DNA of 64,000 bases from Dendrobates tinctorius (lineage: Eukaryota): the NCBI RefSeq assembly GCF_039654945.1, contig NW_027361771.1:36642001-36706000 (forward strand). The letters are read 5' to 3'. The position numbers were made by a program, and so were the translations under genes. Below, piece by piece: positions 4,342 through 62,341 of the stretch. Below the pieces are notes generated by a model. It saw nothing but the letters and a program-made list of their open reading frames with translations, was not told the DNA's origin and searched no databases. Every line of letters begins with the position of its first letter. The stretch's first letter is position 1.

Positions 4342-5030
4342 GTGGATCAATGGTATGCAAGTTAGGGCAAATCCACTCAACGCTTTGGTACTGACCCCAG
4401 GCCTTTCTTAAAGGGATCTCCGGTATGGAAGGCAGGGCAAATCCATCCAGTGCTTTGGTTCTGACCCCATGCCTCTCTTAAAGGGATCCTCGGTATGCAA
4501 GTCAGGGCAATTGCCTTCAAATGCTCGGGTACTGACCCCAGGCTCTCTTAAAGGGATCTCCTGTACGGAAGTTAGGGGCAAATCCCTCAGCGCTCTGATT
4601 CTGACCCCAGGGTTCTATTAAAGGGATCATTGGTATGCAAGTCAGGGCAAGTCCATCCAGCGCTCTGGTTCTGATCCCAGGCTTTCTTAAAGGGATCCCC
4701 GGTATGGATGTTAGGGCAAATCCACTCAGCGCTCTGGTTTTGACCCAAGGCCCCTCTTAAAGGGATCCCCGGTATGGAAGTGAGGGCAAATCCAATCTGC
4801 ACTTTGGTACTGACCCCAGTCCTCTCTTAAAGGGATCCCTGATGTAGAAGTCAGGGCAATTGCCTTCAAATGCTCTGGTACTGACCCCAGGCCTCTCTTA
4901 AAGGGATCTCCTGTACAGAAGTTTGGGCAAATCCCTCAGCGCTCTGATTCTGACCCCAGGGTTCTATTAAAGGGATCATTGGTATGGAAGTTAGGACCGT
5001 TCCACTCAGCGCTCTGGTTCTGACCCCAGG
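4342..5030. repeat. ~70-bp tandem repeat (about 10 units)
   Basis: Recurring ccccaggcctctcttaaagggatc...ggtatggaagttagggcaaatcc...cgctctggttctga at ~70-bp spacing. Confidence 0.9.
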
Positions 5031-5460
5031 CTGACGGGATGATGTGGGATATTAGGGGTAGTAGTCCGGTGGCTCTGGCTGACGGGATGATATGGGATAT
5101 TAGGGGTAGTAGTCCAGTGGCTCTGGCTGATGGGAATGATGTGGGATATTAGGGGTATTAGTCCGGCGGCTGTGACGGGATGATGTGGGATATTAGTGGT
5201 AGTTGTCCGGTGGCTCTGGCTGACAGGATGATGTGAGATATTAGGGGTAGTAGTCCGGCGGCTGTGACGGGATGATGTGGGATATTAGTGGTAGTTGTCC
5301 GGTGGCTCTGGCTCATGGGATGATGTGGGATATTAGGGGCAGTAGTCCGGTGGCTTTAACGGGATGATGTGAGATATTAGTAGTCCGGTGGCTCTGGCTG
5401 ATGGATATTAGGGGTAGTAGTCCGGTAGCACTGGCTGACGGGATGATGTGGGATATTATA
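5031..5460. repeat. ~47-bp tandem repeat (about 9 units)
   Basis: Unit gacgggatgatgtgggatattaggggtagtagtccggtggctctggct; followed by a (TA)n tract at ~5503-5541. Confidence 0.9.
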
Positions 5461-5500
5461 GTGAATGTGGCTATGCGGAGTGGGAGGGGCTATACTCTCA

Positions 5501-5544
<44 letters not shown>

Positions 5545-6261
5545 ATATATGTAATCATTATAATTTGTTATTACTAACCGTAGTTAGTTACTATGCCCGG
5601 GCAGCGCCGGGCTCTTCAGCTAGCTATTAAAGATACAATAGCAGATTCAATTGCTCATAAAGTCCTATATGTGCATTTCTCAAGGAAAAATACATTCACT
5701 TTCTATATCCTTATTGCTGAAATTATTCATTGATGACATGGCTACTAAAAAAAAACCATTATATTTCCCACAAGCTCTACAAACAAAATATTAAACGGTG
5801 GACAGCGCTATAAAAAGATGGACATATCTACCCTATCATTAAACCGTATAGGGCACATTGCATTAGTATGCATAATCCACCTAGCTTCACGTCTAAGCAG
5901 TTTATGTAGATCACCCCCTTGTGGAGGCAAATTGATTTTCTCCAAACCCACAAATACTAAAACATTGGGATCACCTGCATGTATCTCTCTTACTTGATTA
6001 ATTAATCGCGGTACTCCTTTACCAGATGATATGGACTTATAATGTTCTCTGAAGTGCACATATAATGGCCGTAAATTTGCACGGGCAAAAAACCACATAA
6101 ACAACTAAATCAGTTTTACATGAAATAAACTCTGAGACTGAATGGTTTACTGCCCCCATACGAATGATTTTATCTGTCATATGAAATTTACAATAGAGGC
6201 AATGACCGCACTTGTGATTGCCTTTTGGAATACCTGCATGCAGCCAGTTCACATGATCCTT

Positions 6262-6696
6262 TCTGATGTGTGATCGTTAGCGAGATCGCTGAGAAGTCAC
6301 CGATTTTGTGACGCAACAGCGATCTCGCTACGTGTGACACATAGCGGCGACCGGCCCCCCTGCTGGATATCGCTGATCGTGCTCGAATGTCCCAGGCCTT
6401 TTTTTGATCGTTGGCGTCCCGCTGGCCAGCATGCATCGCTGTTTGACGCCGACGAGCGACCTCATTGGCGACGCAGAACTCATGGACGCAGGCGTGAGCC
6501 GTCAGAATAGCTGCTGTGTGACAAGGTCCCAACGACTGCCGAGGTTGTTATACGGATCGCCACATCGTTGCTGCGTCGTTGAGTAGATCTGCCTGTTTGA
6601 CAGCTTACTAGCGATCATGTAGAGACGCACCAGCGATCCTTACCAGGTCGTATCGTTGTCGGGATCGCAGGTGCATCGCTCAAAGTAACAGTACCC
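6262..6696. mobile_element. Harbinger-type MITE (gggtac..cacac family), left end degraded, inside Penelope
   Basis: Right terminus gcatcgctcaaagtaacagtaccc+TTA; internal gatcgct repeats similar to 13536-13918 and 41447-41836. Confidence 0.65.
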
Positions 6697-7721
6697 TTAG
6701 CCTGGTGCTACGTCTACACGAGATAAGTGGCCCCCTTGCTACAATCTCTGCTAATTTCTTGTCCCTTTCCAGGATGTGCCAGTTTCTCCTGATGGAGGCG
6801 CGAATTTGTCGATCCATAGGACCATATTGAAAACAAAACGTCAGTTTCTTTTCTTTTTTACCGATTACGTTATTTTTCACAGAAACCCCATCTTCAGTGA
6901 CTGTTTCTCTATCCACTCTATCTAAAGCTGTTGTCAGTAGTGTGTCTGGGTACCCCCTTTGTCTGAACCTGTTGTATAATTCTGTGGATTGTGTAACATA
7001 GCCTTCGTTGTTGTTGTTAACCCTACGTGTCCTGAGAAATTGACTATAGGGCAAATATTTTTTTGTGTAGGGCGGGTGGAAACTATTAAAATGCAGCATA
7101 GAATTTGTTGCTGTGGGTTTTCTAAATAAAGAAGTACAAATAACCCCATCAGTAATTTCCACCAGGACATCAAGAAATTCCAATTTGGATCCACCAAAAA
7201 CGGATGTAAAGAGCATGTTCATGGTGTTAGTGTGATTAAGATAGGATACAAAAGCCCAAAGGTTTCCCTGGGGCCATCCCACACCATGAAAATGTCGTCG
7301 ACATACTTAAGGTACAGTCTGATGTGCTTGAGGAAATTATTGCTGGTAGAATATATAAATCAAACAAACCTAAAAATAAGTTAGCGAAAGTGCATGCTGC
7401 CGGAGTCCCCATCGCAGTCCCAACATTTTGCAGGTACCACGTGTCTATGAACATGAATGCACTGTGCGTGAGTACAAATTTAACCCCCTCACAGACAAAA
7501 TCAACGAAATGTTGTTCCTTATCCACAGTATTCAAAATCTCTCTAATGGCCTCAACCCCAGCAATTTGGGTGGATTCTCGTATAGAGACTTTCAATATCA
7601 ATTGACACCAAAGAGAAACTCGGTTGCCAAATGAAATTCTGTATTATCTTCAAAAACTCGTTGGTATCTTGGATATAAGATGGAATGTCTTTTAGTAATG
7701 GACGCAACAACCAGTCCATAT

Positions 7722-8484
7722 TGTCACTCCATGCTGGATTGTGACAGATTTAGCACAAGAAACCTTTTTTTTTCCTTTAAGCTTTTGGCTTAAAATTAGT
7801 TTTGCCCCCGGTAGCTGCTAGCGTTATGACACTGTAGTTTACTTAGTTGTAGTTTTGCCCCCCGGTGGCCGCTAGCGTTATTACACGTGAATTACTAGGC
7901 TCCTACCTATAAAGGAGTGTCAGGTGGTTGCAATCACTGTTGGTGATATTGGTCATTTCCAACCATACCTTGGTGAAGGAAGGAGCTAGAGAAGAGTTCC
8001 TTGCAGCTCAGGCAGAGCTTTGGTGTGGAAGGAGCTATAGAGCGGAGTTCCTTGCAGCTCTGTCTGAGTTTTGGTGTAACATCGATTCAGGAGGAAAGCT
8101 GTATTCGGGTGCTGGACTCTGTTGCTGGGAGCAATAGCAACAGAGCAAAGCTAAGTGGTGTTTTCCCTGTTTGTATATTTTTCCTTGTGTGTGTATTAGT
8201 GCAGTGGTGGGATTAGTCTCAGCACCATCCAGCTCACTAGTAAGGGATAGGTGCAGGGTGAGCTAGGGGTTAAGGTATCCAGCTCGGCGACAGGTGAAGA
8301 GCCTGTATAGGGAATGTGAGGAGTGCAGGGACACTGGCTCAGGGGAGTACAGGAGGTCTCCACGTCCCCGTTCCCTAGTGCAGGGCCCACCGTTGTATCT
8401 GATTTCGCCGGCGTTCCCCTTGTTTGTCCTGGTGTTAGTGTCGTCCTGCGGGTCGCGGCATAGAGGACAGGTCACACCGTGACA
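7722..8484. mobile_element. Solo LTR inserted in the Penelope RT
   Basis: TGTCAC...GTGACA termini; 5-bp TSD catat/gatat; TATAAA near 7908; removing it restores the Penelope frame EPLSQY-x-DWLLRP. Confidence 0.85.
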
Positions 8485-8851
8485 GATATACTGGGACAGG
8501 GGTTCTGTAATGGACCCTATCCCAGATACTATGGGACATCCTGAGGGAGAGGTGGTTGATTTGTGTATTTTCGGAATGTGGTACGAATGGGGTCTGGCGG
8601 GAAACTACGGCAGCAGTCTCTCAGCTTTCTTTTGTGTAATCACATTCAAATCCACATATTTCCTCAAAAAAGATCTCAACTCATTACTAAACCCATAGGT
8701 TGGATATTTCTGCAATTTAATATACGTAACAACATCAGACGGTTGTCTACTTGCCTCGGCTAGGTACATAGATTTGGGTAGCAACACCGTGTTACCACCC
8801 TTATCTGCAGGTCTGACTATTGTGTCTGCCCAACTGGTAATCTCTTTTAAT

Positions 8852-9056
8852 CAATAATGAAAAAGTATCCAGCTTCCAAATATACAAAAATTTATTCAAG
8901 GCATAAGAACAAGGATAAATGGACAGGCCCCATCATCCGCTATGAACTTTTTCATTATTGATTTACTCCACGTGTGGCTTCACGAAATATCCGAGCTTCC
9001 ACGCACCACTACTAGCCAAGAAAGCAGGTGATCTGGTTACCTTTATTTTTTGCACA
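8852..9056. mobile_element. 205-bp retroposed insertion, probably a Penelope pLTR remnant
   Basis: 14-bp TSD taatctcttttaat (8838-8851, 9057-9070). Internal 16-bp inverted repeat tcaataatgaaaaagt / actttttcattattga. Confidence 0.65.
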
Positions 9057-9250
9057 TAATCTCTTTTAATACCCGCTTCTCTTCGAAAGTTAAATTCGGT
9101 GGAGCTTTATGATATATTACCACCTCCATGTCCTTTGTCACTTGTGCCTCAAAGAGGTCTATGAGATTACCAGGACAGGAAGGCGGCATATAATTAAAAG
9201 GTACCCCTTGATGGTGGATTTGTATACACTGTGTTTTCTGGACTAGTACC

Positions 9251-10459
9251 GGGCGCTGCCCGGGCATAGTAACTAACTGTGGTTAGTTATAGCAAATTAT
9301 AATTATCCTCCATCTCATAGTCCCGTGCCCATCATACATATCCACGATCTCATAGGCCCATGCCCACATACCCATCATACATATCCTCCATCCCATAGTC
9401 GAGTGCCCATATACCCATCACACATCCTCCATCCCATAGTCCCATGCCCATATACCCATCACACATCCTTCATCCCATAGTCCCATGCCCATATACCCAT
9501 CACACATCCTTCATCCCATAGTCCCATGCCCATATACCCATCATACATATTCGCCATAACATAGTCGAGTGCCCATATACCCATCATACATATCCGCCAT
9601 CCCATAGTCCCATGCCCATATACCCATCATACATATCCGCCATTCCATAGTCCAGTGCCCATATACACATCATACATATCCGCCATCCCATAGTCCCGTG
9701 CCCATATACCCGTCATACATATCCTCCATCCCATAGTCGAGTGCCCATATACCCACACATCCTCCATCCCATAGTCCCATGCCCATATACCCATCACACA
9801 TCCTTCATCCCATAGTCCCATGCCCATATACCCATCATACATATTCGCCATAACATAGTCGAGTGCCCATATAGCCATCATACATATCCGCCATCCCATA
9901 GTCCCGTGCCCATATACCCATCATACATATCCGCCATTCCATAGTCTAGTGCCCATATACCCATCATACATATCCGCCATCCCATAGTCCCGTGCCCATA
10001 TACCCGTCATACATATCCTCCATCCCATAGTCCAGTGCCCATATACCCATCACACATCCTCCATTCCATAGTCAACCATTATGACATCATAATGAGCGGC
10101 GGGGCTTGCAACCTATGATGACATCAGCGTCGCCATGGCAACCATTGTGACATCATAATGAGGGACGGGGCTTGACGCACACACACTTTTCCCCAGTATG
10201 TAGATAGGGGCATTGTGACATCATGAGGGGCGGGGCTTGACGCGCCCACACTTTTTCCCTAGTATGTAGACAGGGGCAAAATTGTTTGGTGAATTGGAAC
10301 GCGCGGGGTTAAAATTTCGCCTCACAACATAGCCTAGGACGCTCTCGAGGTCCAGACGTGTGACTGTGCCAAATTTTGTGGCTGTAGCTGCGACGGTGCG
10401 GATGCCTATCCCGGACATACACACACATACATACACACACTTGAGCTTTATATATTAGA
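9251..10459 (-). mobile_element. Non-autonomous Helitron family Y, copy 1 (3' end truncated in the hairpin)
   Basis: 5' end TCTAATATATAAAGCT on the minus strand; internal 41-43-bp tandem array; 3' hairpin partly present. Confidence 0.85.
9306..10072. repeat. 41-43-bp tandem array inside Helitron Y copy 1
   Basis: Unit catcccatagtcccatgcccatatacccatcatacatatcctc. Confidence 0.9.
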
Positions 10460-11795
10460 CTAGCTGAAGAGCCCGGCGCTGCCCGGGCATAGTAACTAAC
10501 TGTGGTTAGTTGTAGCAAATTATAATTATCCTCCATCCCATAGTCCCGTGCCCATATACCCATCACACATCCTCCATCCCATAGTCCCATGCCCATATAC
10601 CCATCACACATCCTCCATCCCATAGTCCCATGCCCATACACCCATCATACATATTCGCCATCCCATAGTCGAGTGCCCATATACCCATCATACATATCCG
10701 CCATCCCATAGGCCCGTGCCCATATACCCATCATACATATCCTTCATCCCATAGTCCAGTGCCCATATACCATCACACATCCTCCATCCCATAGTCCCAT
10801 GCCCATATACCCATCATACATATTCTCCATCCCATAGTCCCATGCCCATATACCCATCATACATATTCGCCATCCCATAGTCGAGTGCCCATATACCCAT
10901 CACACATCCTTCATCTCATAGTCCCATGCCCATATACCCATCATACATATCCTCCATCCCATAGTCCCGTGCCCATACACCCATCATACATATCCGCCAT
11001 CTCATAGTCCCATGCCCATATACCCGTCATACATATCCTCCATCCCCTAGTCCAATGCCCATATACCCATCACACATCCTCCATCCCATAGTCCCGTGCC
11101 CATATACATATCCGCCATCCCATAGTCCCGTGCCCATATACCCGTCAAACATATCCTCCATCCCATAGTCAAGTGCCCATATACCCATCACACATCCTCC
11201 ATTCCATAGTCCAGTGCCCATATACATATCCGCCATCCCATAGTCCCGTGCCCATATACCCGTCATACATATCCTCCATCCCATAGTCCAGTGCCCATAT
11301 ACCCATCACACATATCCTCCATCCCATAGTCCAGTGCCCATATACCCATCACACATCCTCCATCCCATAGTCAACCATTATGACATCATAATGAGCGGTG
11401 GCGGGGCTTGCGACCTATGATGACATCAGCGTCGCCATGGCAACCGTTGTGACATCATAATGAGGGGCGGGGCTTGATACGCACACACTGCTTCCCCAGT
11501 ATGCAAATAGGGGCATTATGATATCACAATGAGGGGCGGGGCTTGACATGCACACACTTTTTCCCCCAGTATGTAGATAGGGGCAAAATTGTTAGGTGAA
11601 TTGGAACGCGCGGGGTTAAAATTTCGCCTCACAACATAGCTTAGGACGCTCTCGGGGTCCAGACGTGTGACTGTGCCAAATTTTGTGGCTGTAGCTGCGA
11701 CTGTGCGGATGCCTATCCCGGACATATACACACATACATACACACACATATATACACACACTCATACATACACACTTTGAGCTTTATATATTAGA
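10460..11795 (-). mobile_element. Non-autonomous Helitron family Y, copy 2 (complete)
   Basis: Minus strand begins A|TCTAATATATAAAGCT and ends GCCCGGGCAGCGCCGGGCTCTTCAGCTAG (hairpin + CTAG), the canonical Helitron termini. Confidence 0.9.
10528..11372. repeat. 41-43-bp tandem array inside Helitron Y copy 2
   Basis: Same unit as 9306-10072. Confidence 0.9.
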
Positions 11796-12034
11796 TTACC
11801 ACCTCCATGTCCTTTATCACTTGTGCCTCAAAGAGGTCTATGAGATTACCAGGACAGGAAAGCGGCATATAATTAGAAGGTACCCCTTGATGGTGGATTT
11901 GTATACACTGTGTTTTCTGGACTAGTACCTGTGATCGCGGTGTCAAGCCTAAACACGCAGGATGGATTTGACAGCATAGACCTGCAGCGGTACCGACTGT
12001 CTTTTTTCTTGTCCGGTTGATAGTCAACATACAC

Positions 12035-13225
12035 TATGGAGAAATGTGTGAGGAGATAGCATGGGGATGGAAAAATGTGGGAGGAGACCGTATGGGAAGA
12101 GGATGTGTGAAAAGACAGTATGGCGAGAGGGGAGAAATGTTTGAGAAGACAATATGAGGAGGGGAAATCCATAAGGAGACAATATGGGAAAAGGGGATGT
12201 GGAAAGATATAATAAGGTGAACAGAGGAGAACTTATTTTTCATAGTTTCAGGCGTTCCCTCAAAACACATTTGTTCAGAGCGGCCTATCACGTTCACTAA
12301 TCAGTCATTCTATGTGTAAGTGTGCGTGTGTAGCCCATTCACTATCTCCAGCCATCCTTCACTCCCTCAAGATGGCTGGACCATCATAGTAAATACACCA
12401 TTGTAAACACACACCTGTACTTTGTATCTCCCCCACCTCATTGTAGATTGTAAGCTCTCACGAGCAGGGTCGTCTTATTTTGCTTTAATTATTGTATTGT
12501 TAACGTTGTTACTTATGACTTGTGTTTTGAAACTGTTAAACTGTAAAGCGCTGCGGAATATGTTGGCGCTATATAAATATTATTATTATTTATGAACCAG
12601 TATGGGTGATGTGTGAGGACATAGTATGCAGATGAGGAGGATGTGGGAAGAGAAAGTAAGGGGAGAGGGGGGAATGTATTAGGAGACCATATGGGGAAGG
12701 GGATATGTGACAAGACAGTATGGGGAGAGAGGAGACTGTGAACACATAGTATGGGGAGTTGAAATGTGTGAGGACATAGTATGGGGATGTTGGAAAGTAG
12801 GAGGAGACAGCATGGGAGAAGGGATGTGTGAGAAGGCAGTATGGGGAGAGGGGGGAAATATTTGAGAAGACAGTATGAAGAGGCGAAATGTATGAGCTGA
12901 CAGTATGGGGAGGGGGAATGGGGGAGCAGATGGCATGGGGAAGAAGGAATGTGTGAGGATACAGTATGGGAAGGGGGAAATGTGTGTAGAAGACAGTATG
13001 AGGAAATCTGTGTGGAGATAGTATGGGAAGAGAGGGGAATGTATGAAGAGGTAGTATGGGGAGGGGATATGTGCGAAGAGACTTCGTGAGGAAGTTTAAT
13101 ACTGTATGTGGGAGGAGACAGTTTGGGGAGGGGGAGATGTGTGAGGAGAAACTATGGGGATGGGGGGATGAAGGAGACAGTATGGGACGCAGGAGATGTG
13201 TGAGTAGGTAGCATGGGAAAGGGGA
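12035..13225. repeat. Degenerate GA-rich ~32-bp tandem repeat, interrupted by an L2 end
   Basis: Recurring gagacagtatggggagggggaaatgtgtgag; the same motif flanks the Harbinger element at ~45400-45513 and 50417-50650. Confidence 0.7.
12330..12590 (+). mobile_element. L2-clade LINE/SINE 3' end
   Basis: tagattgtaagctc...ctgtaaagcgctgcggaatatgttggcgctatataaat followed by a short (tat)n tail, the conserved L2-type 3' stem-loop and tail. Confidence 0.75.
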
Positions 13226-13535: not shown

Positions 13536-13918
13536 AGCCCCCGTTACACACTGCGATATCGCTAGCAATATCGCTGTAAAGTCACTGATTTTGCGACGTA
13601 GCAGCGATATTGCTAGTGATATCGCTACATGTGATACTTAACCCCGTTGATTATCGCTGATCGCGCGAGAAGGTCCTGGATCATTTCTCGTCGTCAGCTT
13701 CCTGCTGGACTTCCTGTGGCGCCGACGAGCGACGCGTGGACGCGGGCGGGAGGACGTCTTCAGCGCCGCGTCTGACAGGTAAGTAGCGACCCCCGACCCC
13801 AGCGATGACGCTGGTGAGATCTGCCTGTGTGGCAGCTCACTAGCGACCACTTAGCGATGCACCAGCGATCCATATCGTTGTCGGGATCGCTGGTGCATCG
13901 CTATGTGTAACGGTACCC
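13536..13918. mobile_element. PIF/Harbinger-type MITE
   Basis: TIRs AGCCCCCGTTACACA / TGTGTAACGGTACCC with TAA TSDs; inverted relative at 41447-41836. Confidence 0.8.
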
Positions 13919-14325: not shown

Positions 14326-15431
14326 TCAAGTGCTGGGAAGACTCCTGTTCTGTGAAATGTTAGGCATTGCCATCGCCTTATGAATTCTCTCATGTTTTAG
14401 AAGTACAGATTTCTGGGTAAAACTTTTTCCGCATACCAAACATGGAAATGGCCTCTCTCCTGTGTGAATTCTCTGATGTTTAACAAGAGCTGATTTCTTG
14501 GCAAAGCATTTAGCACATTCTGAGCATGGAAATGGCTTCTCTCCTGTGTGGATTCTCTGATGCTTAATAAGACCTGATTTGAGAGCAAAACGTTTACTGC
14601 ATTCTGAACATGGAAAAGGCTTTTCCCCAGTATGACTTCTATGATGCTTAACAAGATCTGATTTCTGGGTAAAAGATTTTCCACATTCAGGACATGAAAA
14701 TGGCCTCTCTCCAGTGTGAATTCTCTGATGTTTAATAAGATCGGATTTCTTGGTAAAACATTTCTCACATTCTGAACATGAAAATGGCTTCTCTCCTGTG
14801 TGGATTTTCTGATGTTTATAAAGATCTGATTTCTGAGTAAAACTTTTTCCACATTCTGAACATGAAAACGGCCTCTCCCCTGTGTGACTTCTATGATGTT
14901 TGACAAGATCAGATTTCTGCGTAAATGATTTTCCACATTCAGGACATGAAAATGGCTTCTCCCCTGTGTGAACCCAATAATGGTTAACCAAACCATATTT
15001 CTTGGTGAAACATTTTCCACATTTAGAACATGAAAATGGCTTCTTTCCTGTATGGATGATCTGATGTTGAACTAAATTCGACTTCTTTGTAAAACATTTC
15101 CCACATTCTGAACATGAAAACAGCTTTTCACCCTTATGAATTTCCTTATGTTCTACACGACATGATTTCTTGGCAAAACTGGGGCCAAAATCCAAACATG
15201 AAAATGGTTTCTCTACTGTGTGAACTTTCTGATGCTCAGCAAGACCAGATTTCTGCTTAGAATATTTCCTACATTGTGGACATTGAAAATGTGTCTCTTT
15301 TGTGAGAGTTTTCTGATCTAGTCTGTGTTTAAGCCATTTCCCACACCCTAAACATTGATAATGATTATTTTCATTTTCTTCACAGGCTGGGGTGGAAAAG
15401 AGGTTTTGTCCCAAGTCCTTGATGTGGTCAT
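14326..15431 (-). CDS. ZNF last coding exon (zinc-finger array)
   Basis: Acceptor ctcctcctttccag|AT; nine consecutive intact CxxC-x12-HxxxH fingers; TGA at 14326-14328. Confidence 0.95.
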
Positions 15432-61772: not shown

Positions 61773-61825
<53 letters not shown>

Positions 61826-62337
61826 TTAGCTGAAGAGCCCGGCGTTGCCCGGGCATAGTAACTAACTATGGTTAGTTATAATAATCTTAAGTGTAGAGCC
61901 CCGCCCACTCTGCATAGCCACATTCACTATAATATCCCACATCATCCCGTCAGCCAGAGCTACCGACCTACTACCCCTAATATCCCACATCATCCCGTCA
62001 GCCTGGGGTCAGAGCCAGAGCGCTGAGTGGAACGGTCCTAACTTCCATACCGGGAATCCCTTTGAGAGGCCTGGCGTCAGAACCAGAGGCCTGAGTGGAT
62101 TTGCCCTGACTTCCATATCAATGATCCCTTTAATAGGAGCCTGGGGTCAGAACCACAGTGCTGAGTGGAATGGTCCTAATTCCATACCTGTGATCCATTT
62201 AAGAGAGGCCTGGGGTCAAAACCAAAACGCTGGATGGATTTGCCCTAACTTCCATACCAATGATCCCTTTAAGAGATGCCTGGGGTCAGTATCAGAGCGC
62301 TGAGGGATTTGCCGTAACTTCCATACCGGAGATCCCT
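61826..62337 (-). mobile_element. Non-autonomous Helitron family X, 3' part
   Basis: Reverse complement of the 4342-5623 element: hairpin + CTAA end, 2 units of the 47-bp repeat, ~5 units of the 70-bp repeat; cut at TTAA 62338 by a piggyBac-like element. Confidence 0.78.
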
Positions 62338-62341
62338 TTAA

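What the first reader, a model, noticed from the sequence alone, without database searches (positions are those of the whole stretch)
9117..11929. Head-to-tail Helitron dimer flanked by a 134-bp duplication of the target
Seen: two Helitron Y copies are joined with no intervening base at ...TTCAGCTAG|TCTAATATA... (10460/10459). The outer 5' end sits at a proper A|TC site (11795). The outer 3' end breaks off inside the hairpin and joins host Penelope sequence. Host 9117-9250 is repeated at 11796-11929 with only 3 substitutions, and the duplicated block starts (minus strand) GGTACTAG, so a host CTAG lies just behind the broken hairpin. Known: Helitrons insert at A|T without a TSD, and CTAG-TC junctions are the signature of circular or rolling-circle intermediates. 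Inference: a concatemer was 5'-ligated normally, then resolved by microhomology-guided repair synthesis 134 bp away. This would be an alternative insertion route that duplicates target DNA and could create new Helitron 3' ends.
Basis: partly seen in the sequence, partly recalled or inferred. Interest (0 to 1): 0.72.

Follow-up and report, generated by a model that had tools for sequence, protein, structure and literature searches.

The report
Helitron pair flanked by duplicated target
Two copies of a small rolling-circle transposon (Helitron) sit head to tail inside a dead Penelope-type retroelement of a frog-type genome. They are bracketed by a 134-bp duplication of the target, most simply a DNA-break repair scar at the damaged 3' end; a new way of inserting is not shown.

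Summary
On the minus strand the order is U | A1 (11929-11796) | H1 (11795-10460, complete TC...CTAG) | H2 (10459-9251, lacks its last 15 nt) | A2 (9250-9117) | D. A1 and A2 differ at 3 of 134 sites.

The outer 5' junction is a canonical A|TC, and the inner junction is CTAG|TC with no base between. The family is very high-copy, with a real 3' terminus at 10460. The host is the N-terminal coding part of a Penelope-like element. Its reading frame is open across both U|A1 and A2|D, so U-A-D is the likely empty site.

- H1 and H2 are probably not two turns of one circle. Their satellite arrays differ in monomer order, and they are at least as diverged (5.1%, or 7% with the satellite) as A1/A2 (2.2%).
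- Head-to-tail Helitrons, successive insertion at the host-A/Helitron-T site, and truncated or new 3' ends are all published.
- The unusual part is the long target duplication. It fits repair synthesis plus end joining with 0-2 nt microhomology, but whether that happened during integration or later cannot be told from one locus.

One extra finding: the target resembles the element's own 5' end (about 1 in 10,000 AT sites).

This scan noted head-to-tail Helitrons elsewhere in the genome.

The parts
11930..12035 (-). U: host sequence upstream of A1; same open frame as A1 (ORF 12030-11791)
   Evidence: about 8 contigs of paralogous copies run across 11929/11930 (table 3, rows 11926-11937)
11796..11929 (-). 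A1: upstream copy of the 134-bp duplicated target block
   Evidence: (D8); exact 157-nt contig 11777-11929 in X1 (record 6)
10460..11795 (-). H1: complete non-autonomous Helitron (5' TC, 3' CTAG). 5' unique part 11373-11795, 43-bp satellite about 10532-11372, 3' terminal part 10460-10531
   Evidence: 3' terminus at 10460 shared by 729 (X1), 480 (X20), 196 (X6) and 80 (X19) contigs with unlike AT-rich flanks (table 7)
10471..10488 (-). H1 3' subterminal hairpin (GCCCGG / CCGGGC)
9251..10459 (-). H2: second Helitron copy with a complete 5' end, 3' end cut 15 nt short of CTAG. Satellite about 9309-10073 with its own 294-bp internal duplication (9460-9753 / 9754-10047, 6 differences)
9248..9265 (-). 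H2|A2 junction: retained hairpin CCGGGC-AGC-GCCCGG followed by host TA-CTAG-T; 0-2 nt microhomology (GG) and one extra C
9117..9250 (-). A2: downstream copy of the duplicated target block, continuous in frame with D
9057..9116 (-). D: host sequence downstream of the A|T target. It starts TATATCATAAAGCTC, which resembles the Helitron 5' end, and encodes ..YHKAPPNLTFEEKRVLKEI
   Evidence: a contig of organism F holds D and 92 nt of A contiguously (record 17)
5808..8837 (-). Remainder of the degraded Penelope-like element (..IVRPADKGGNTVLL..PKIHK.., RT core, thumb, GIY-YIG-like tail) that hosts the insertion
   Evidence: motifs read by eye; Pfam gave no hit

Best explanation
A non-autonomous Helitron family inserted at an A|T site inside the N-terminal coding region of a dead Penelope-like element. 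That site happens to resemble the element's own 5' end. The Helitron transposase made the outer 5' junction (A|TC) and the inner CTAG|TC junction. The pair most likely arose by two successive insertions, the second into the A|T formed by host A and the 5' T of the first, or by transposition of an already heterogeneous dimer. It is less likely to be two turns of one circle. The 3' side is a host break-repair junction, not a transposase junction. The downstream copy lost its last 15 nt. The broken end was joined, with at most 2 nt of microhomology and one extra base, to a newly synthesised second copy of the 134 bp of target that lies upstream of the insertion point (repair synthesis followed by end joining). 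Shown: the layout, the junction sequences, the family termini and the host frame. Inferred: the order of events, the repair pathway, and whether the break came from a failed second strand transfer at integration or from a later break at the 3' end that was repaired from an empty homologue.
For: Layout and junctions. The exact 5' terminus lies after host A with only the shared T as overlap. A template switch would have to land on 1 of 1336 positions, so the transposase made this junction. The family terminus is real (table 7). U-A-D is the native order. The frame is open across U|A1 and across A2|D and runs on into Penelope-type N-terminal motifs. Contigs of paralogues or of a related species span U|A and A|D (table 3 and records 17, 21). 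H1 and H2 were unlike at birth: the monomer order differs, the c-a-b-c layout is seen elsewhere (record 14), and substitutions are 21/408 in unique parts and 81/1157 with the satellite, against 3/134 in A (p=0.23 and 0.04). The target resembles the 5' end: only 1 of 9290 other AT sites in the window scores as high, which would make this site and any resident 5' end a preferred target. Published background: successive insertion at host-A/Helitron-T (PMC2267711); truncated and new 3' ends, with the hairpin acting as terminator (PMC4778049); no target duplication in normal Helitron insertion (PMC5876387).
Against: This is one locus only, and no empty or intermediate allele was seen. The difference in divergence between H1/H2 and A1/A2 is not significant in the unique parts (p=0.23) and rests partly on a satellite alignment that may pair non-orthologous monomers. 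Satellite arrays can rearrange quickly, so a single-circle concatemer is not excluded. Two insertions at one site need a hotspot, for which the only evidence is this site's resemblance to the 5' end. The H2|A2 junction is not confirmed by an independent sample.
Confidence: 0.55

Rival explanations
1. A rolling-circle concatemer (two turns of one circle, or read-through of the first 3' end) was joined normally at its 5' end to the A|T target. Its 3' end was never cleaved at CTAG, broke at the hairpin, and was joined by microhomology-guided repair synthesis 134 bp upstream. Dimer and duplication would then arise in one event, the eukaryotic counterpart of IS91 one-ended transposition.
For: All four junctions fit. 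A1/A2 (2.2%), the H1/H2 unique parts without CpG-context sites (13/408) and the 294-bp internal duplication of H2 (2.0%) are of similar age. Circles with CTAG|TC junctions and read-through of the 3' end are shown experimentally (PMC4778049).
Against: H1 and H2 differ in satellite architecture (21 against 19 monomers, 'c' monomers only in H1), in a 29-bp microsatellite stretch and in four small indels. Copies of one template should start identical. H1's 118-bp unit is a family feature seen in other contigs, so it predates insertion. The same product arises without a concatemer.
Confidence: 0.2
2. No transposase was involved in this locus's rearrangement. A replication-based template-switching event (of the MMBIR/FoSTeS kind) duplicated A and copied a Helitron dimer from elsewhere into the junction.
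For: A tandem duplication with inserted material at its joint is a typical product of template switching. The target and the Helitron 5' end share ATAT.ATAAAGCTC.
Against: The inserted DNA starts at the exact first base of the element after a host A, and only 1 nt (T) of overlap exists at the real junction. A switch guided by the shared motif would have given GGTAATATATAAAGCTC, not the observed GGTAATCTAATATATAAAGCTC.
Confidence: 0.07
3. Assembly artefact: a single Helitron and a single A block were wrongly expanded in a repeat-rich region.
For: The Helitron body is a 43-bp satellite of very high copy number, and most contigs fit two places (table 1). No listed record spans the stretch.
Against: A1 and A2 differ at 3 sites. 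H1 and H2 differ by dozens of substitutions and indels and in array layout. A single-copy-depth contig carries A1's private variants joined to the H1 5' end, and the A2 bin has single-copy depth of its own.
Confidence: 0.05
4. The 134-bp block is repeated in the Penelope-like element itself, and the Helitrons merely sit between the two native copies.
For: Penelope-like elements often carry terminal or tandem repeats (general knowledge; earlier notes of this scan).
Against: The two blocks end exactly at the Helitron 5' terminus and at the Helitron breakpoint. Removing pair plus one block restores one continuous open frame U-A-D. No second A-like block is seen elsewhere in the window.
Confidence: 0.03

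Closest known systems
Head-to-tail Helitron pairs and arrays (Myotis, Pritham and Feschotte 2007, as cited in PMC2267711; maize, Du et al. 2008, PMC2267711)
   Same: Precise CTAG|TC junction with no host base between; upstream copy at a canonical A|TC site.
   Different: Those pairs are not reported with a long duplication of the target. Here the downstream copy is also 3'-truncated.
Truncated and de novo Helitron 3' ends (Helraiser assays and Helibat copies, PMC4778049)
   Same: The 5' end is obligatory and exact, the 3' end is variable. The hairpin is the terminator, and its loss or bypass gives new ends.
   Different: Published new ends are still joined next to a target T without duplicating the target. 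Here the end lies at the foot of the hairpin and joins a second copy of 134 bp of target.
IS91 one-ended transposition (bacterial HUH rolling-circle transposon; general knowledge, not read here)
   Same: Exact origin end, missed terminus, multimeric or variable-length insertions.
   Different: Bacterial; ends at pseudo-termini; no long target duplication is described, to my knowledge.
Aborted synthesis-dependent strand annealing followed by end joining at transposon-induced breaks (Drosophila P-element gap repair; general knowledge)
   Same: Repair synthesis copies some homologous template, then the end is joined with little or no microhomology, leaving partial copies or duplications.
   Different: Not described for Helitron ends. 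The template here would be the empty homologue or sister target.

Membership tests
Helitron (canonical, non-autonomous) | 5' terminus TC | tested here: met
   Both copies start TCTAATATATAAAGCTC.
Helitron (canonical, non-autonomous) | 3' terminus CTRR preceded by a short GC-rich hairpin | tested here: met
   H1 ends with hairpin + CTCTTCAG + CTAG. The same terminus occurs at 5595-5623 and 61827-61854. H2 lacks the last 15 nt.
Helitron (canonical, non-autonomous) | Many copies sharing the termini, with unrelated flanks | tested here: met
   729, 480, 196 and 80 contigs in four runs end their match at 10459/10460 with AT-rich, poorly agreeing flanks. Depth falls from about 10^5 to about 40 at 11795/11796.
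Helitron (canonical, non-autonomous) | Insertion between A and T without target-site duplication | tested here: not met
   The 5' side is A|TC. The 3' side is not CTAG|T, and a 134-bp target duplication brackets the pair. This fails for this insertion, not for the family.
Helitron (canonical, non-autonomous) | Mobilised by a RepHel protein of an autonomous partner | not tested
   No RepHel gene was looked for. The element is non-coding satellite plus unique ends.
Rolling-circle concatemer (tandem copies of one template) | Units identical at birth, so no more diverged than sequence duplicated in the same event and with the same internal layout | tested here: inconclusive
   Unique parts 5.1% against 2.2% (p=0.23); with satellite 7.0% (p=0.04); array layouts differ. 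This leans against a concatemer.
Microhomology-mediated or synthesis-dependent end joining scar | Junction with 0-few nt of microhomology, possible filler base, and a templated copy of nearby sequence | tested here: met
   GG at most is shared between the Helitron consensus (GCGCC|GGGCT) and the host (ACA|GGTAC). There is one extra C, and 134 bp are copied from the adjacent target.
Penelope-like element (the host) | RT with Penelope-type N-terminal motifs and a C-terminal GIY-YIG endonuclease | tested here: inconclusive
   Motifs read by eye in minus-strand frames (..NLTFEEKRVLKEI....ADKGGNTVLL....PKIHK.., GIY-YIG-like tail). Atlas neighbours of the 200-aa ORF carry PF26215 HTH_animal at score 0.97. 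Pfam HMMs gave nothing on the fragments, and there was no hammerhead hit in Rfam.

The most novel reading that the evidence does not exclude
Helitron integration can be finished on the 3' side by host repair synthesis instead of the second strand transfer, leaving a long target duplication and a hybrid hairpin-CTAG end. This family may also choose targets that mimic its own 5' end. That would make resident 5' ends hotspots and would explain head-to-tail arrays without concatemers.
Probability: 0.2. Interest if true: 0.62.

Novelty: new variant of a known kind. Interest (0 to 1): 0.38.

Why it matters
Helitrons are defined partly by leaving no target duplication, and annotation tools rely on that. 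A documented insertion with an exact 5' end, a broken 3' end and a long target duplication would show how failed or damaged Helitron ends are rescued by host repair. It would also give a route by which flanking host DNA comes to lie next to a hairpin-CTAG motif. The resemblance of the target to the element's 5' end, if general, would bear on how the transposase picks targets and on why Helitrons pile up head to tail. As it stands this is one locus built from known kinds of events, so its value is as a lead for a genome-wide count.

Tried and rejected
1. Other copies of the Penelope block. The word search with the A-D ORF and the U-A ORF found nothing. The full HMMER search with the A-D ORF gave one hit, P0001, a fibronectin-type repeat protein that matches by summed weak repeats (26% over 38 aa) and is spurious.

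Neither the same locus in other assemblies nor paralogous DNA could be fetched.

3. Reads. Only Logan contigs were on offer. Contigs are about 110-400 nt, so no record spans the structure. The independent sample of the same organism (X19) has no depth on A, so allele state and independent confirmation remain open.

4. Pfam on the host ORF fragments: no hit even at E=10. Rfam on the whole window: no hit.

5. A search of the scan's notes by sequence for this Helitron family came back blank.

6. The idea that GGTACTAG at the H2|A2 junction is a variant Helitron end was rejected. The same 8 nt follow unrelated sequence at U|A1.

7. The idea that U ends in another Helitron 3' end was rejected. There is no hairpin (third fold) and no similarity.

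8. Relative age of H1 and H2 from family-majority bases. H2 has 5 clear private changes and H1 has 3-4, from a truncated table, so this is too thin to use.

Full report
**What is there.**
Read on the minus strand, the stretch is U (to 11930) | A1 11929-11796 | H1 11795-10460 | H2 10459-9251 | A2 9250-9117 | D (from 9116).
- A1 and A2 are 134 bp each and differ by three transitions with no indel.
- The base after each block is T, as expected when an element that begins with T enters an A|T site.
- H1 is 1336 bp, begins TCTAATATATAAAGCTC and ends with a GC-rich hairpin, CTCTTCAG and CTAG.
- H2 begins with the same 17 nt directly after H1's CTAG, with no base between.
- H2 ends at ...GCAGCGCC plus one C. 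The last 15 nt of the consensus are missing.
- What follows H2 is GGTACTAG..., the same letters that follow ...ATCACA at the start of A1.
- The hairpin is not destroyed, only re-registered. The junction still folds as a 6-bp stem.

**The elements are Helitrons of a very abundant family.**
- Laid contigs of four runs give depths near 10^5 over H1 and H2, against about 10-60 over A, U and D.
- The depth drops sharply at 11795/11796.
- Hundreds of contigs (729, 480, 196 and 80 in the four runs) stop matching at 10459/10460 and continue into unlike AT-rich sequence. That is what a real 3' terminus with T-flanked, AT-rich targets looks like.
- The same 3' terminus closes two copies of a sister family with a different satellite body, at 5554-5623 and 61827-61880.

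**The host.**
- On the minus strand one frame is open from 12030 through A1 and stops 5 nt inside H1.
- The same frame is open from the end of H2 through A2 into D (..DMEVV|IYHKAPPNLTFEEKRVLKEI).
- Next comes a 219-bp high-copy insertion with a 14-bp target duplication (8838-9056). It is missing from a contig of a related organism (record 17).
- After that insertion the frame runs on into ..IVRPADKGGNTVLL..PKIHK.. and further reverse-transcriptase and GIY-YIG-like remains.
- These are Penelope-type motifs by eye. The protein-atlas neighbours of the 200-aa ORF carry PF26215. Pfam and Rfam gave nothing.
- So 'Penelope host' is reasonable but not proven by a profile hit.
- Contigs of paralogues or relatives cross U|A (about 8 contigs, and record 21) and A|D (record 17). 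Together with the frame, this makes U-A-D with a single A the likely empty site.
- I could not fetch an intact relative to exclude a native second A block.

**Is the pair a concatemer?**
Two turns of one circle should be identical at birth and exactly as old as the A duplication.

| Comparison | Differences | Divergence | Fisher p against A1/A2 |
|---|---|---|---|
| A1 / A2 | 3/134 | 2.2% | - |
| H1 / H2, unique parts | 21/408 | 5.1% | 0.23 |
| H1 / H2, unique parts plus satellite | 81/1157 | 7.0% | 0.04 |

- Eight of the 21 unique-part differences lie in CpG context.
- The p=0.04 result carries the caveat that satellite monomers may be mispaired.
- The array layouts are more telling. H1 reads a b b c a b c a b b b a b b a b b b a a, with 34-bp 'c' monomers in a 118-bp unit. 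H2 reads a bbbbb aa bbbbb aaa bb, with no 'c' and its own 294-bp duplication.
- A contig from another sample lies over c-a-b-c without gaps (record 14). That unit therefore belongs to the family and did not arise in H1 after insertion.
- The copies also differ by a 29-bp microsatellite stretch and four small indels.
- I conclude that H1 and H2 probably came from different source copies or from an already mixed dimer.
- Du et al. showed for maize that a second Helitron can enter the A|T made by host A and the resident 5' T, giving exactly this junction (PMC2267711).

**The target looks like the element's own 5' end.**
- D begins TATATCATAAAGCTC, and the element begins TCTAATAT-ATAAAGCTC.
- Among 9290 other AT sites of the window, on both strands, only one scores as high.
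- This cannot explain the 5' junction by template switching. Such a switch would give GGTAATATATAAAGCTC, while the sequence has the full TCTAAT... after GGTAA.
- It may mean that the transposase nicks host sites that mimic its left end. That would also make resident left ends preferred targets.
- This is one observation and needs a genome-wide logo.

**The 3' side.**
- Normal Helitron integration leaves no target duplication (PMC5876387).
- Truncated and new 3' ends are known, but they are joined next to a target T (PMC4778049).
- Here the junction has at most GG of microhomology and one extra C, and it leads into a second copy of the 134 bp that precede the insertion point.
- That is the signature of repair synthesis followed by end joining. 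Two timings give the same product.
The free target end copied A from the sister or homologue before being joined to the Helitron end.
- Timing (b): a normal insertion was later broken at its 3' end, for example by transposase nicking of CTAG|T when the copy acted as donor, or at the hairpin. The D-side end invaded the empty homologue, copied 134 nt, and was then joined to the trimmed Helitron end.
- New insertions are heterozygous, so an empty template is expected.
- Nothing in the sequence separates (a) from (b). H2's internal 294-bp duplication (2.0%) has the same age as A1/A2 (2.2%), which is curious but not decisive.

**Has the hybrid end spread?**
The junction happens to read hairpin-TA-CTAG-T, but the A block stays low-copy. 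There is no sign that it served as a new 3' end.

**Known and new.**
- Already published: head-to-tail Helitrons, both models for them, circles, read-through and truncation.
- Apparently undescribed: a long target duplication around a Helitron insertion. My literature searches found none, but they cover open-access papers only.
- Earlier notes of this scan list other head-to-tail Helitrons and two cases of duplicated Helitron flank in this genome. These hint that repair accidents at Helitron ends recur here. I did not check those notes.

**Verdict.**
I rate it a new variant of a known kind, of moderate interest, pending the allele and genome-wide tests listed under next steps.

**Limits.**
- Only contigs were available, with no raw or long reads.

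Noticed in passing
window 9101-9116 (minus strand, start of D) against 10443-10459 / 11779-11795: The host target just 3' of the insertion point (TATATCATAAAGCTC) resembles the Helitron's own 5' end (TCTAATATATAAAGCTC). Only 1 of 9290 other AT sites in the window scores as high. This is possible left-end mimicry in target choice.
   Followed up: partly
window 8838-9056: A 219-bp high-copy insertion (depth in the thousands) sits inside the Penelope-like ORF, flanked by a 14-bp direct repeat (TAATCTCTTTTAAT on the + strand). It is precisely absent from a 1040-nt contig of a related organism.
   Followed up: partly
window 9460-9753 and 9754-10047: A 294-bp (seven-monomer) tandem duplication inside H2's satellite has 6 differences (2.0%), the same divergence as the A1/A2 duplication.
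   Followed up: partly
window 9291/9298 joined to 10459 in contigs of run X1 (table 5): Repeated contigs (depth about 100-700) read a complete Helitron 3' end, a T, then a second partial 3' terminal segment. Doubled 3' ends therefore exist elsewhere in the genome.
   Followed up: no
window 12036-13224, interrupted at about 12237-12592: A 30-bp satellite array lies upstream of U, split by a high-copy SINE-like insertion (..GTAAGCTC..TGTAAAGCGCTGCGGAATATGTTGGCGCTATATAAATA..). On the opposite strand the satellite shares 20-nt stretches (80-85%) with the Helitron's 43-bp satellite.
   Followed up: no
window 4344-5623 (+) and 61814-62341 (-): A sister Helitron family has the same 3' terminal 55-70 nt but a different body (70-bp and 48-bp satellites). 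Its 3' flanks here are C and A, not T, and no clear 5' TC end was seen in either copy.
   Followed up: partly
window 14326-15414 (-): An intact 362-aa ORF made of about 11 C2H2 zinc fingers (HTGEKPFSC linkers), a vertebrate-type zinc-finger gene or exon.
   Followed up: no
window 13540-13640: A near-perfect inverted repeat (..CGATATCGCTAGCAATATCGCTG.. / ..CAGCGATATTGCTAGTGATATCGCT..), possibly a small foldback element.
   Followed up: no
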